Shown here one piece after another: positions 53,154-55,301 of a DNA stretch of 64,000 nucleotides. Under the pieces are notes generated by a model, which did no database searches, had not been told where the DNA came from, and worked only from the letters and a program-made list of their open reading frames with translations. Source of the stretch: Hydrolagus affinis (taxonomy: Eukaryota). The stretch is from the NCBI GenBank assembly GCA_012026655.1, contig JAAILG010000051.1, positions 62,001-126,000 of the forward strand, read 5' to 3'. Each line of letters opens with the position of its first letter. Within the stretch, counting starts at the first letter, position 1. The position numbers were made by a program, and so were the translations under genes.

Positions 53154-55301
53154 GGAGCGGATGAACAGCAAGGTCCTGTTAGGAGGAGTAGAATTCAGGA
53201 AGCTGGAGATCAGGGAGAGGCAGGGATGTCAAGTAGTGAGGCTTTAGACCCAACAGGTGCTTCAGAAGGAACTGCAGAGTTGGGGGACGCCTCGCTGGTT
53301 GCAGATGGAGCTGTGCAAGGAACTGCGCGTGAAGAAGGAAGGAAAAAGTTAAAGGGTGTGCTACAGATTAGCAAACTAGCAGCAGGTGGTATGCAATCTA
53401 AACAACAGATGGACGGAGAGCAACAAGTGGGAACTCCCATTGCTTTTCATTCTCCATGGAAAAAGGCAAAAATATTTCCTATGATACTTCAGAAGGTAAA
53501 AGCAAGCACCAAAGATTCCAGTTATGCCAAACTCGTGTCTGCACGTCGTGTGGATAGCCAAGAGAGTGTGGCGAGTGCGTCTTCGGGAAGTGTGGTCAGT
53601 GGAAAATCTGGTCAGAAATCAGCCAAAGGTAAGCCAACAGGCAAAAAAAAGATGGGCAAAGTGCTGAAGCATATCACCATCTCCAAACAGTTAAAATCCA
53701 AGCGTAAATCACAGGGGTCTATCAGTAAAAGTTCAGCTGCTGAGAGTGAACCAGAGGCAGCATCCCAAACCAAGGGTAGCAGTGAATCAGAAAAGGAACA
53801 AAAGAAGTCAAAAGTTGCGATTAGTGTCACCGGAGAGAGTGATCAGGAAAAAAGTGCAACCTCCGAGGACGACGATGATGGATCGAAGAAGAGACGGGAT
53901 TCCTCCAAAACGTCCGGAGATGACCAGTCACAAAGGAGTAGCGCCCAACAGTCACAGACCGAAGAAAAAGAGTATCTTAAAGTGACACTGGATCAGGATG
54001 AAACCAATGAAAGTACAGTGGACTCTGATGAAGAAAAAGATGATGAATCAGTGGGAACAGAGGATGACGCCAAGTCAAAGATTGACTCTGAGGCAGGAGA
54101 AGCAGAATCGGAGGAAGGTGTTGCTTCAGAAGGTGGAGATTCTGACGAAGAATCAAAGAGTGAAATCTCTGATAAATCTAGTTCTGGAAGTGGACAGAGT
54201 TCACAGAGTAGAGCTTCTGATACAGAAGGTCAAGATTCAGCATCGAGAGCGTCGGACAGAACCGAATCCAATGCTGAGGAAATATCTGATGAATCTGATG
54301 GAGATGGTAGCACTAGCAGAACAACAGAATCCAAAACTAGGTCAAGTACATTTAGCAAAGGGAGTGTTACCAGCAGGAGTACCTCAATAGCAACAGAAGG
54401 AACAGAGATGTCAGATAGTTCCATAGACAGCGATGCCAGTCAGCAAACATCAAATGTAGGTAGTTCTCAAGAAAAGTCCAGCCTGTCAACTCAGACAAGC
54501 ACAGCGAGCACGAAAACAGATGCCACAACAGGAGGTAGTAGTTCTTCACCTGGGTCTTTTTCAGGGAGTGGATTAAGTGGAAGAAAATCAACATCTGTCA
54601 CTGAACAAAGTCAAAGTTTCATTTCCAAAGTTTCAGCATCTACCAGCGATTTTGAAGCAATTCAGGAGGAATCTGATGAAGATGTCACGTCTGAAGACTA
54701 TGAAGACAGTGAAAGTAAACTCAGCGAATTTATAAGTCAAGAAGAGGAAGAGTCTGGGAACAGTAGCGATGGAACAAAATTTGGAACGTCAATCAGTCAA
54801 AACACTATCAATAGTGTGAATAGGAGTGAGAGCAGATATAGTCAATCGACAGACGCACAGACTGACAGTGCTGGAAATAGTATGAGGAGAATAAATACTG
54901 ATCAGTCAGATTACAATGACAGTGATGATGTCAGTCAAGCAACGGATTCACAGCAAACAACTATTAGTAGTGCATTCAGCGAAAGCAGGTTAAAAAGCTT
55001 GAAGAGCAATTATAGTGACAATACTGAACTCTCCAGAATCAGTGATGGAAGCAGCTTGAGACGTAGTTTGACAAGTGCAGCAGATTCTAATCAAAGCGAG
55101 ATTTCAGGTTATTCTGAAAGAAGTAACAGAATGAGCAATGCAAGTAGAAAGAATGGAAGTTTAAGCAAAGGAACATCTTCAGAATATAATGAATCCAGCA
55201 GTGTTGGAGAAGGCCTGCAAGACTCAACCGAGGACAATGAAGAACTAGATGAAGAAATATCAGAAGCAGAGAGTGTTCAGGATACAGTTACATCATTATA
55301 A
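53154..55301 (+). CDS. PCDH15: PCDH15 CD2-type terminal exon (715 aa, Ser/acidic-rich, ends DTVTSL*)
   Basis: attacag|GGAGCG, phase 0 and in frame with ORF 53226-55301. WKKAKIFPMILQKVK and EEKEYLKVTLDQDETNESTVDSDEE match recalled mammalian CD2 WKRARIFPMIFKKVR and EEDKDYL.LTLDQEEATESTVESEEE. Ends in a class I PDZ ligand. Confidence 0.88.
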   Translation, partial: GADEQQGPVRRSRIQEAGDQGEAGMSSSEALDPTGASEGTAELGDASLVADGAVQGTAREEGRKKLKGVLQISKLAAGGMQSKQQMDGEQQVGTPIAFHSPWKKAKIFPMILQKVKASTKDSSYAKLVSARRVDSQESVASASSGSVVSGKSGQKSAKGKPTGKKKMGKVLKHITISKQLKSKRKSQGSISKSSAAESEPEAASQTKGSSESEKEQKKSKVAISVTGESDQEKSATSEDDDDGSKKRRDSSKTSGDDQSQRSSAQQSQTEEKEYLKVTLDQDETNESTVDSDEEKDDESVGTEDDAKSKIDSEAGEAESEEGVASEGGDSDEESKSEISDKSSSGSGQSSQSRASDTEGQDSASRASDRTESNAEEISDESDGDGSTSRTTESKTRSSTFSKGSVTSRSTSIATEGTEMSDSSIDSDASQQTSNVGSSQEKSSLSTQTSTASTKTDATTGGSSSSPGSFSGSGLSGRKSTSVTEQSQSFISKVSASTSDFEAIQEESDEDVTSEDYEDSESKLSEFISQEEEESGNSSDGTKFGTSISQNTINSVNRSESRYSQSTDAQTDSAGNSMRRINTDQSDYNDSDDVSQATDSQQTTISSAFSESRLKSLKSNYSDNTELSRISDGSSLRRSLTSAADSNQSEISGYSERSNRMSNASRKNGSLSKGTSSEYNESSSVGEGLQDSTEDNEELDEEISEAESVQDTVTSL

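What the first reader, a model, noticed from the sequence alone, without database searches (positions are those of the whole stretch)
53154..55301. Intact, giant CD2 exon of PCDH15 in a probable cartilaginous fish
Seen: a 2148-nt stop-free exon with a good phase-0 acceptor, lying between the shared exon and CD3 as in mammals. It has two CD2 signature blocks (53457-53501 WKKAKIFPMILQKVK; 53961-54035 EEKEYLKVTLDQDETNESTVDSDEE) and a PDZ ligand VTSL. Known (recalled): CD2 is the isoform required for tip links in mature mammalian cochlear hair cells and for kinociliary links, and zebrafish is reported to use only CD1 and CD3, so CD2 is often treated as mammalian. Inference: the three-tail system predates the shark/bony-fish split, and the two conserved blocks mark the functional core of CD2.
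Basis: partly seen in the sequence, partly recalled or inferred. Interest (0 to 1): 0.85.

Follow-up and report, generated by a model that had tools for sequence, protein, structure and literature searches.

The report
Chimaera PCDH15 CD2 tail exon
This is the real, intact "CD2" alternative last exon of the hair-cell tip-link gene PCDH15 in a chimaera (a cartilaginous fish); the same exon is already annotated in a related chimaera and CD2 is already reported in chick and zebrafish, so it is an ordinary, known feature.

Summary
Positions 53154-55301 are 715 sense codons plus TAA behind a good acceptor. This is the longest stop-free run in the window: 717 codons, against at most 207 in 100 shuffles.

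It is the CD2-type terminal exon of PCDH15 in a holocephalan. It matches the last 717 residues of Callorhinchus milii RefSeq protocadherin-15b end to end, 601 of 721 identical. CD1, two of the small shared exons, CD2 and CD3 lie in the mammalian order.

Orthologous tails occur in shark, ray, sturgeon, gar, bichir, frogs, turtles, birds, squamates and teleosts.

The exon is transcribed on the sense strand. The 51071>53154 junction was not seen.

No mammalian CD2 sequence could be obtained, so that alignment is untested.

A chick CD2/3 hybrid is cited from 2006 (PMC3337639), and zebrafish CD2 was reported in 2026 (PMC13443151).

The scan had already noted the CD1 tail on this same window.

The parts
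39928..41391 (+). CD1 tail exon. The coordinates give the stop-free frame plus its stop; the acceptor was not mapped. It is proline-rich and ends ...PSQSTSS*.
   Evidence: Second longest stop-free run in the window, 487 codons. 32% identity, E 9e-19, to the CD1-like N-terminal part of the Conger model P0013, including LTVKEQARQFEQQA. C-terminus read.
49600..49674 (+). Small cytoplasmic exon downstream of CD1, used by CD2 and CD3 forms.
   Evidence: tblastn of C. milii P0036 residues 1464-1488, 100% identity.
50937..51071 (+). Last small exon shared by CD2 and CD3 forms (..YEVPQYGSRRRLISPSGMYDEFGEVIMEDDGGYYYSPDGSNAAPE), with donor GAG|gtaaat.
   Evidence: tblastn of P0036 residues 1489-1533, 98% identity. 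RNA contig ends exactly at 51071, and the joint 51069>56127 to CD3 is GT..AG. Donor score 8.1.
53130..53153 (+). Pyrimidine-rich tract and AG acceptor of the CD2 exon.
   Evidence: Sequence. In-frame TAA at 53145-53147. The first residue of the exon aligns with residue 1534 of P0036, directly after the shared exon.
53154..55301 (+). CD2-type alternative terminal exon: 715 codons plus TAA.
   Evidence: open frame. (601/721 identical to the C-terminus of XP_042192779.1). (orthologues). (RNA coverage).
53343..53378 (+). Conserved basic block KKLKGVLQISKL; predicted helix.
   Evidence: Conservation profile. L66 is invariant; K67, V69, M70 (a residue of the majority of rows; the window itself has L at position 70) and S73 are nearly invariant. 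AF2 helix at residues 63-78, low confidence.
53451..53501 (+).
   Evidence: Best conserved stretch across 25 other sequences. W102 is invariant.
53511..53546 (+). Conserved block KDSSYAKLVSAR.
   Evidence: Y124, K126, L127, A130 nearly invariant. AF2 helix at residues 123-129.
53805..53840 (+). Conserved block KSKVAISVTGES.
   Evidence: S219, S222, I223, E228 nearly invariant.
53961..54035 (+).
54036..55286 (+). Fast-evolving Ser/Asp/Glu-rich, low-complexity part of the tail.
   Evidence: Residues 201-715 are 26% Ser with net charge -64. Little column conservation. The three indels against C. milii, of 3, 15 and 9 nt, are all in frame.
55287..55298 (+). C-terminal VTSL, a class I PDZ-binding-type motif.
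   Evidence: C. milii has the same VTSL. Among the proteins fetched by then, 61 of 152 end in STSF and 5 in STAF. Mouse CD2 is printed as ..NTAL.
55302..55577 (+). Probable 3' untranslated part. RNA coverage fades here.
   Evidence: X3 depth is 1.66 in the bin 55184-55380, which spans the stop codon. It is 0.92 at 55381-55577 and 0 at 55578-55971. There is no AATAAA or ATTAAA up to 56128, only variants such as ACTAAA at 55419 and GATAAA at 55454.
56129..56704 (+). CD3 tail exon: acceptor tttacacag|TGT, 191 codons, ends MGPWNNLHIPMTKL*.
   Evidence: Joint 51069>56127 seen in an X1 contig and in one read each of X3 and X4. Mouse CD3 peptide is printed as MGPWNSLHIPMTKL.

Best explanation
Positions 53154-55301 are the CD2-type alternative last coding exon of PCDH15 (protocadherin-15, the lower tip-link cadherin of hair cells). 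The animal is a holocephalan other than, or clearly diverged from, Callorhinchus milii.

Inferred mechanism: the transcript splices from the small exon ending at 51071 either to this exon (giving a CD2 tail) or past it to 56129 (giving a CD3 tail). CD1 is made from the exon at about 39928-41391.

The exon encodes a 715-residue cytoplasmic tail that is intrinsically disordered. It has three parts:
- A lysine-rich stretch, residues 60-200, net charge +21. It carries short conserved linear motifs: KLKxV..SK, SPWKKAKIFPMxLxKxK and KDxxYAKLxSAR.
- An acidic motif, KxYLKVTLDQDExxESTVDSDEE.
- A long, fast-evolving Ser/Asp/Glu-rich stretch that ends in the class I PDZ-type ligand VTSL.

By analogy with mouse CD2, the tail most likely anchors PCDH15 in kinocilial and tip links. 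It would do this by binding PDZ scaffolds through its C-terminus and other partners through the conserved motifs.

Shown here: the open frame, the orthology, the gene order, the conservation pattern, transcription, and the predicted lack of a fold. Inferred: the 51071>53154 splice, which rests on the RefSeq model of the sister species and on frame and acceptor logic, and all partner binding.
For: - Open frame far beyond chance.
- End-to-end match to the C-terminal 717 residues of C. milii XP_042192779.1: 601 of 721 identical, query residues 1-715 against subject 1534-2250. The modelled exon borders are therefore the same.
- The rest of the gene is in the window, in order: cadherin and PCDH15-like domain exons, the transmembrane exon, CD1, two of the small shared exons, CD2, CD3.
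- All named hits in three searches are PCDH15 or unnamed fragments of it. They come from shark, ray, chimaera, sturgeon, paddlefish, gar, bowfin, bichir, frogs, turtles, birds, squamates and teleosts, including carp pcdh15a. Hit counts were 22, 119 and 42, plus 9 representatives.
- Conservation is concentrated in five blocks plus the C-terminus.
- RNA evidence, run X3: single-cell poly(A) raw reads, 78 of 159 laid reads at least 99% alike. They cover the exon on one strand at depth about 2-5. Depth is 0 in the introns at 51244-51834 and 55578-55971.
- RNA evidence, run X1: a 2014-nt contig covers 53333-55303 through the stop. Its 38 listed differences translate exactly into the C. milii residues.
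- AF2 on a 21-row alignment gives mean pLDDT 47 and only two short helices. No Pfam family matches and no PDB sequence matches.
- Papers: mouse C-termini are printed as CD1 STSL, CD2 NTAL, CD3 MTKL, all type I (PMC5102745, passage). Whirlin PDZ1 binds all three C-terminal peptides (PMC7532178, passages).
Against: - No read or contig joint 51071>53154 was listed in any of the 4 runs. The listing threshold is 3 reads or a contig, and depth there is only about 2.
- X3 shows a few reads, depth 0.2-1.0, in the intron just upstream at 52229-53213.
- There is no canonical AATAAA or ATTAAA between the stop and the CD3 acceptor.
- None of the 22, 119 and 42 hits is named as mammalian. This holds even though the size range (606-1927 aa) and the size window (0.55-1.75 times the 2075-aa query) both include the 1790-aa mouse CD2 form (length from PMC4119359).
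- Identity with mammalian exon 38 therefore rests on position, tail type and the naming used in papers, not on an alignment made here.
- A crude count gives 10 synonymous and 28 non-synonymous changes against C. milii among the 38 differences shown, out of 249 listed in total. Much of the tail is therefore under weak residue-level constraint.
Confidence: 0.88

Rival explanations
1. The exon is used mainly as an internal piece of a hybrid CD2/3 tail, as reported for chick. An internal donor in the exon would be spliced to the CD3 exon at 56129, so the protein ends in MTKL and not in VTSL.
For: [quoted passage not shown]
- Many database models join CD2 to CD3. Examples are catshark P0001, ray P0040, sturgeon P0023, turtle P0002, conger P0013 and carp P0137.
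- The older C. milii model XP_007897895.1 (2397 aa) joins ...ESIQDT directly to WARQKRVKL, just before the VTSL codons.
- The CD3 acceptor is phase 0, and phase-0 GT sites exist in the exon, for example 53496 AAG|GTAAAA.
Against: - No joint from inside the exon to 56127/56129 was listed in any of 4 runs.
- The C. milii RNA contig runs through the candidate site, the stop codon and 26 further letters.
- The site before VTSL (ACA|GTTACA) is a poor donor and is not among the 15 best GT sites.
- The current RefSeq model ends in VTSL.
- The VTSL end is kept in both chimaeras. An STSF-type end is kept in 61 of the 152 proteins fetched by then, which argues that the free C-terminus is used.
Confidence: 0.12
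2. The open frame is a separate nested gene or transcript. It would encode an acidic, serine-rich protein starting at the ATG at 53226, transcribed from within the PCDH15 intron and not spliced to PCDH15.
For: - Several annotations call the same stretch a stand-alone protein. Names used include 'dentin sialophosphoprotein-like', 'flocculation protein FLO11-like' and 'uncharacterized protein LOC...' in birds and Scleropages.
- X3 has a few reads in the 1 kb upstream of the acceptor.
- No junction read was listed.
Against: - The first 24 codons before the ATG are also conserved with C. milii.
- The frame opens exactly at a good acceptor in phase with the upstream exon.
- Full-length RefSeq and UniProt PCDH15 models of dozens of species contain it.
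- Zebrafish CD2 transcripts were measured with isoform-specific primers (PMC13443151).
- The stand-alone models look like fragments from short contigs of 47-124 kb.
Confidence: 0.03
3. The exon is the ancestral gnathostome tail in the CD2 position, but it is not recognisably related in sequence to mammalian CD2. The mammalian exon 38 would have been remodelled or replaced, so the two blocks are not 'CD2 signatures' in the mammalian sense.
For: - None of 183 listed hits is named as mammalian.
- The mouse tail is far shorter. The protein is 1790 aa, and only 273 residues lie beyond P1515 in human (PMC4119359).
- Mouse ends in ..SEQYNTAL, against ..QDTVTSL here.
- Squamate hits already fall to E 1e-11 to 1e-22, which shows fast divergence in some amniotes.
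Against: - Ahmed 2006, as cited in PMC3337639, recognised a CD2 part in chick cDNA. Chick CD2 (P0072) carries both blocks.
- The 2026 zebrafish paper uses the name CD2 for both paralogs.
- The search tool needs shared 5-residue words and shows cluster representatives only, so a blank is weak evidence.
- Teleost ends such as ..NSTAL (P0097) bridge STSF and mouse NTAL.
- The position next to CD3 is the same as exon 38 next to exon 39.
Confidence: 0.1

Closest known systems
Callorhinchus milii protocadherin-15b, RefSeq model XP_042192779.1 (2250 aa)
   Same: The same exon with the same borders, the same VTSL end and the same five conserved blocks. 601 of 721 residues are identical over the full exon.
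   Different: 17% of residues differ and there are three in-frame indels. The window is therefore another holocephalan or a clearly diverged lineage. It is a computed model. An older model of the same gene, XP_007897895.1, joined CD2 to CD3.
Mouse and human PCDH15-CD2 (exon 38; mouse Q0ZM28, 1790 aa)
   Same: - Alternative terminal exon lying after the CD1 exon and the small exons shared with CD3, and directly before the CD3 exon.
- Type I PDZ-binding C-terminus: NTAL in mouse and VTSL here.
- Specific to one of three cytoplasmic tails.
   Different: - The tail here is about twice as long (715 aa).
- No residue-level alignment could be made, because no mammalian CD2 sequence was returned by any tool.
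- The functions known in mouse (tip links of mature cochlear hair cells, kinocilial links, TMIE binding) are not tested in any cartilaginous fish.
Chick hybrid CD2/3 isoform class (Ahmed et al. 2006, seen only as cited in PMC3337639)
   Same: A non-mammalian PCDH15 with a CD2 part. Chicken models P0072 and P0045 share all conserved blocks with the window exon.
   Different: The chick cDNA is described as CD2 fused to CD3. Here no CD2-to-CD3 joint was seen, and the RNA contig of C. milii reads through to the stop. Ahmed 2006 itself is not held in the library.
Zebrafish pcdh15a-CD2 and pcdh15b-CD2 (PMC13443151, 2026)
   Same: CD2 tails in a non-mammal, transcribed at a low level beside CD1 and CD3. 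Carp pcdh15a models P0047 and P0137 carry the same blocks.
   Different: The zebrafish sequences themselves were not seen. Teleost tails end in ..STAF or ..STSF and have a weaker first block.

Membership tests
PCDH15 gene (protocadherin-15) | The exon lies in a locus that encodes the cadherin repeats, the PCDH15-like domain before the membrane, the transmembrane helix and the common cytoplasmic region of PCDH15. | tested here: met
   tblastn of C. milii PCDH15 gives 11 colinear exon matches from 3122 to 55298 on the + strand, plus one weak secondary match to another cadherin repeat at 17636-17797. Pfam finds Cadherin and PCDH15_12th in the orthologue P0040.
PCDH15 CD2 isoform class | Alternative coding exon with its own stop. 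It is placed after the CD1 exon and the small exons shared with CD3, and directly before the CD3 exon. | tested here: met
   CD1 at 39928-41391, small exons at 49600-49674 and 50937-51071, CD2 at 53154-55301, CD3 at 56129-56704. The mouse order is exon 35 (CD1), 37 (shared), 38 (CD2), 39 (CD3), from PMC4119359 and PMC7532178.
PCDH15 CD2 isoform class | Spliced in frame to the exon shared with CD3. | tested here: inconclusive
   Phase and acceptor fit, and the RefSeq model of C. milii uses exactly this junction. However, no 51071>53154 joint was listed in 4 runs. Only the CD3 joint 51069>56127 was seen.
PCDH15 CD2 isoform class | The exon is transcribed. | tested here: met
   X3 raw RNA reads cover it on one strand at depth about 2-5 across the exon. 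An X1 RNA contig of 2014 nt covers 53333-55303. The tissues are unknown because run names are coded.
PCDH15 CD2 isoform class | Isoform-specific class I PDZ-binding motif at the C-terminus. | tested here: met
   VTSL. Mouse CD2 NTAL is called a type I PDZ-binding interface (PBI) in PMC5102745. Binding to any PDZ domain was not tested.
PCDH15 CD2 isoform class | Sequence similarity to mammalian CD2 (mouse Q0ZM28, exon 38). | not testable with these tools
   No mammalian CD2 sequence was returned. None of the 22, 119 and 42 hits is named as mammalian. Only the last 11 residues of mouse CD2 were seen, in a paper.
PCDH15 CD2 isoform class | Sequence similarity to the tails that papers call CD2 in non-mammals (chick, zebrafish). 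| tested here: met
   Chicken XP_015143563.1 (P0072) and carp pcdh15a (P0047, P0137) share the blocks. Bird fragments hit the exon at E 1e-21 to 1e-31, with one (Indicator) at only 2.8e-4. The link between these sequences and the papers' 'CD2' is by name and species, not by accession.

The most novel reading that the evidence does not exclude
The roughly 300-residue N-terminal part of CD2, with its five short motifs, is an ancient module kept since before the split of cartilaginous and bony vertebrates. The two blocks SPWKKAKIFPM.. and KDYLKVTLDQDE..ESTVDSDEE are the clearest of these motifs. The mammalian CD2 tail would be a shortened, diverged derivative. On this reading the motifs are the docking sites for the CD2-specific partners in kinocilial and tip links. 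The giant Ser/Asp/Glu-rich remainder would be a tunable, probably phosphorylated spacer. No paper found here says this for cartilaginous fish.
Probability: 0.45. Interest if true: 0.4.

Novelty: already known. Interest (0 to 1): 0.2.

Why it matters
For hair-cell biology, the useful point is that CD2 is not a mammalian invention. All three PCDH15 tails, in the same order, are present in chimaeras, sharks and rays as well as in bony vertebrates.

The CD2 tail also has a small set of motifs that have been kept for the whole history of jawed vertebrates. These motifs are concrete candidates for mapping the binding of CD2-specific partners.

This can already be read from public annotation, namely RefSeq models for Callorhinchus and Narcine. 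CD2 outside mammals is in print for chick and zebrafish. The window therefore adds one more species and no new kind of thing.

Tried and rejected
- **Pfam** on the exon and on the CD3 exon: no family. The two weak matches, DnaI_N and Sof1, are below their cut-offs and are taken as chance.
- **PDB** sequence search: 0 matches at E up to 10.
- **ESM Atlas**: no usable hit.
- **AF2**: no fold, mean pLDDT 47, so no fold search was run.
- **Direct comparison with mammalian CD2.**
  - Three homologue searches were run: the chimaera exon alone, a sturgeon protein restricted to its CD2 part, and a turtle protein restricted to its CD2 part, with a size range that includes 1790 aa.
  - One all-against-all representative search was also run.
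  - None gave a hit named as mammalian.
  - The cause cannot be told apart among real divergence, the word filter, and isoforms hidden behind cluster representatives.
- **Paper search for the motifs as letters**: 0 papers.
- **Papers not held:** Ahmed 2006 and Ahmed 2008. The chick hybrid is therefore known to me only through the sentence in PMC3337639.
- **CK2-type [ST]xx[DE] sites:** 37 observed against a mean of 40 in 500 shuffles. There is no enrichment beyond composition, so I make no claim about CK2.
- **Internal donor for a CD2/3 hybrid.** The best GT sites were scored with a simple matrix. None lies at the site used by the old C. milii model, and no read supports any of them.
- **Rows dropped.**
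  - In one search, 4 of the 29 chosen orthologues (Amia, Oryzias, Denticeps, Gasterosteus) were left out, because my pattern did not find their first block. The alignment had 26 rows.
  - In one search, the synonymous/non-synonymous count used only the 38 CD2 differences among the 40 rows shown, out of 249.
- **Spliced model.** Each exon was searched alone, and the joined step was left out.
- **Supplements** of PMC13443151 (Table S2, primers) are closed. They may name the zebrafish CD2 accessions.
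Full report
**1. The observation**

Positions 53154-55298 translate into 715 residues without a stop, and TAA follows at 55299-55301. The exon starts behind ttggttgcattttcataattacag. An in-frame TAA lies two codons upstream of the AG, so the frame opens at the acceptor.

In six frames this is the longest stop-free run of the window, 717 codons. The next two are 487 codons (39928-41388) and 204 codons (56090-56701). In 100 shuffles of the window the longest run averaged 137 codons and never exceeded 207.

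**2. What it is**

A tblastn of the Callorhinchus milii protein P0036 on the window gives 11 colinear + strand matches from 3122 to 55298, plus one weak secondary match at 17636-17797. For the cytoplasmic exons identity is 92-100%.

The exon itself aligns from its first to its last residue with residues 1534-2250 of P0036, with 601 of 721 identical. P0036 is RefSeq XP_042192779.1, 'protocadherin-15b'.

It is not the C. milii sequence itself. RNA contigs of run X1 differ from the window by 167 letters and 27 gap letters over 53333-55303. The 38 differences that were listed translate exactly into the C. milii residues, and three in-frame indels match the gaps.

**3. Gene order**

- The CD1 exon is the 487-codon frame at 39928-41391. 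It is proline-rich and matches the CD1-like part of the Conger model P0013 at E 9e-19. It ends ..PSQSTSS*. The scan's earlier notes s1-907429 and s1-907430 pointed me there.
- Small exons follow at 49600-49674 and 50937-51071.
- Then comes the CD2 exon.
- 827 bases after its stop comes the CD3 exon, 56129-56704, ending MGPWNNLHIPMTKL.

Mouse has exon 35 for CD1, exon 37 shared by CD2 and CD3, exon 38 for CD2 and exon 39 for CD3 (PMC4119359 and PMC7532178, passages read). The order is the same.

**4. Relatives**

*Searches with the exon alone*
  - The taxa are catshark, a turtle, tarpon, conger, a frog, a sturgeon, 12 birds and 3 squamates.
  - One further hit is an unnamed Logan protein.
- The HMMER scan of 1.84 billion representatives gave 9 hits.

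*Searches with the CD2 part of database proteins*
- The CD2 part of a sturgeon PCDH15 gave 119 hits among 5054 candidates.
  - 115 are annotated as protocadherin-15.
  - The other 4 are an unnamed 'hypothetical protein' or 'uncharacterized protein'.
  - Two rows are MetaClust entries without a species.
  - The taxa are C. milii, the ray Narcine, sturgeons, paddlefish, gar, bowfin, bichir, frogs, turtles, many birds, squamates and many teleosts, including carp pcdh15a and salmonids.
- The CD2 part of a turtle protein gave 42 hits among 7674 candidates.

*Mammals*
- No hit in any list is named as mammalian.
- The blank is weak evidence, because the tool needs shared 5-residue words and shows cluster representatives only.

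**5. Conservation**

In a MAFFT alignment of the window exon with 25 orthologues, conservation is concentrated in the first 300 residues. Four of the 29 chosen orthologues were dropped because my pattern missed their first block. The conserved stretches are:
- KLKxV..SK (residues 65-75)
- SPWKKAKIFPMxLxKxK (100-116)
- KDxxYAKLxSAR (120-131)
- KS..IS.T.ES (218-229)
- KxYLKVTLDQDExxESTVDSDEE (272-294)
- the C-terminal T-S-L/F

A second alignment of 21 rows gives R11, L66, W102 and G150 as invariant.

The remaining 420 residues are Ser/Asp/Glu-rich and poorly conserved.

Among the 152 proteins fetched by then, 61 end in STSF, 53 in MTKL (CD3 or hybrid models), 5 in STAF, and one each in VTSL and STAL. 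Mouse CD2 is printed as ..GANSEQYNTAL.

**6. Nature of the protein**

- The exon product is 23% Ser with net charge -50. Residues 60-200 have net charge +21 and residues 201-715 have net charge -64.
- AF2 on the 21-row alignment gives mean pLDDT 47, pTM 0.15 and only two short helices, at 63-78 and 123-129.
- No Pfam family and no PDB chain matches.
- It is best read as a disordered tail with short linear motifs and a PDZ-type end.
- Against C. milii, the 38 listed differences split into 10 synonymous and 28 non-synonymous, near what no constraint would give. The blocks themselves are almost unchanged and all indels are in frame. This is a crude count on 38 of 249 listed differences.

**7. Expression and splicing**

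| Run | What it is | What it shows |
|---|---|---|
| X2 | Genomic-type contigs | Depth 50 throughout; 49 differences in 4810 letters |
| X1 | RNA-type contigs | Exons only; a GT..AG joint 51069>56127; a loose end before 50935 that reads as the upstream exon |
| X3 | Single-cell poly(A) raw reads | 78 of 159 reads at least 99% alike; one strand only |

X3 depths are:
- 4.2 on the shared exon;
- about 2-5 on the CD2 exon;
- 7-15 across most of the CD3 exon;
- 0 in two intron stretches (51244-51834 and 55578-55971);
- 0.2-1.0 in the 1 kb before the CD2 acceptor.

The joint to CD3 was seen in a contig of X1 and in one read each of X3 and X4. No joint 51071>53154 was listed, but at a depth of about 2 and a threshold of 3 reads this says little.

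The splice into CD2 therefore rests on phase, the acceptor and the RefSeq model, not on reads.

There is no AATAAA or ATTAAA between the stop and the CD3 acceptor. RNA coverage ends between 55381 and 55577.

**8. Hybrid CD2/3**

PMC3337639 (passage read) cites Ahmed 2006 for a hybrid CD2/3 class expressed in chick.

Many gene models join CD2 to CD3. The older C. milii model XP_007897895.1 joins ..ESIQDT to WARQKRVKL just before the VTSL codons.

In the window that site is a poor donor, and no run shows such a joint. I keep this as the main rival.

**9. What is in print**

- PMC13443151 (2026; passages) states that both zebrafish paralogs have CD1, CD2 and CD3. It refers to Table S2, which I could not open. 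It also reports that CD2 transcripts were detected but were never the major form.
- In Xenopus eye only CD1-like and CD3-like cDNAs were cloned (PMC5461027, passages).
- Searches for PCDH15 and CD2 together with shark, lamprey or evolution found no paper on cartilaginous fish. A search for the motifs as letters also found none.
- The specific statement 'CD2 is present in Chondrichthyes' may not be in print, but it is plain in RefSeq.

**10. Verdict**

The feature is real and correctly named. The evolutionary inference is sound.

The one open item of some value is the direct alignment with mammalian CD2, and with it the question of whether the conserved motifs survive in mammals.

Noticed in passing
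window 41272-41391: The CD1 tail ends ..NHFPSQSTSS*. Mouse CD1 is printed as ..QPHSQSTSL. The last residue here is Ser and not Leu, so the class I PDZ ligand of CD1 seems lost in this assembly. It was not checked against reads or against C. milii.
   Followed up: partly
window 55299-56128: There is no canonical AATAAA or ATTAAA between the CD2 stop and the CD3 acceptor. Only variants occur: AATAGA at 55334, ACTAAA at 55419, GATAAA at 55454, TATAAA at 55909. RNA coverage fades at about 55381-55577.
   Followed up: partly
window 52229-53213: A few sense-strand RNA reads of run X3, at depth 0.2-1.0, lie in the intron just upstream of the CD2 acceptor. Two other intron stretches have depth 0. This could be retained intron, pre-mRNA or an upstream start.
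   Followed up: no
window 51930-51982: A short repeat in the intron attracts many contigs and reads with loose ends on both sides in all four runs. X2 summed depth is 868 against 50 elsewhere. It is probably a dispersed repeat family.
   Followed up: no
window 56473: 15 of 20 X3 reads carry a 6-nt insertion (TCTGGC) in the CD3 exon, in frame and within ..SSGSVGSS... The X2 contigs do not carry it. It is a likely allele or a difference between close species.
   Followed up: no
P0153 (C. milii XP_007897895.1) against window 55284-55289: An older RefSeq model of the sister species joins the CD2 exon to the CD3 exon immediately before the four PDZ-ligand codons. The same kind of CD2/3 model is common in other species.
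   Followed up: partly
window 53496 and 53629: Two strong donor-like sites lie inside the CD2 exon: AAG|GTAAAA, phase 0, inside the conserved ILQK|VK block, and AAG|GTAAGC, phase 1. No read shows them in use.
   Followed up: partly
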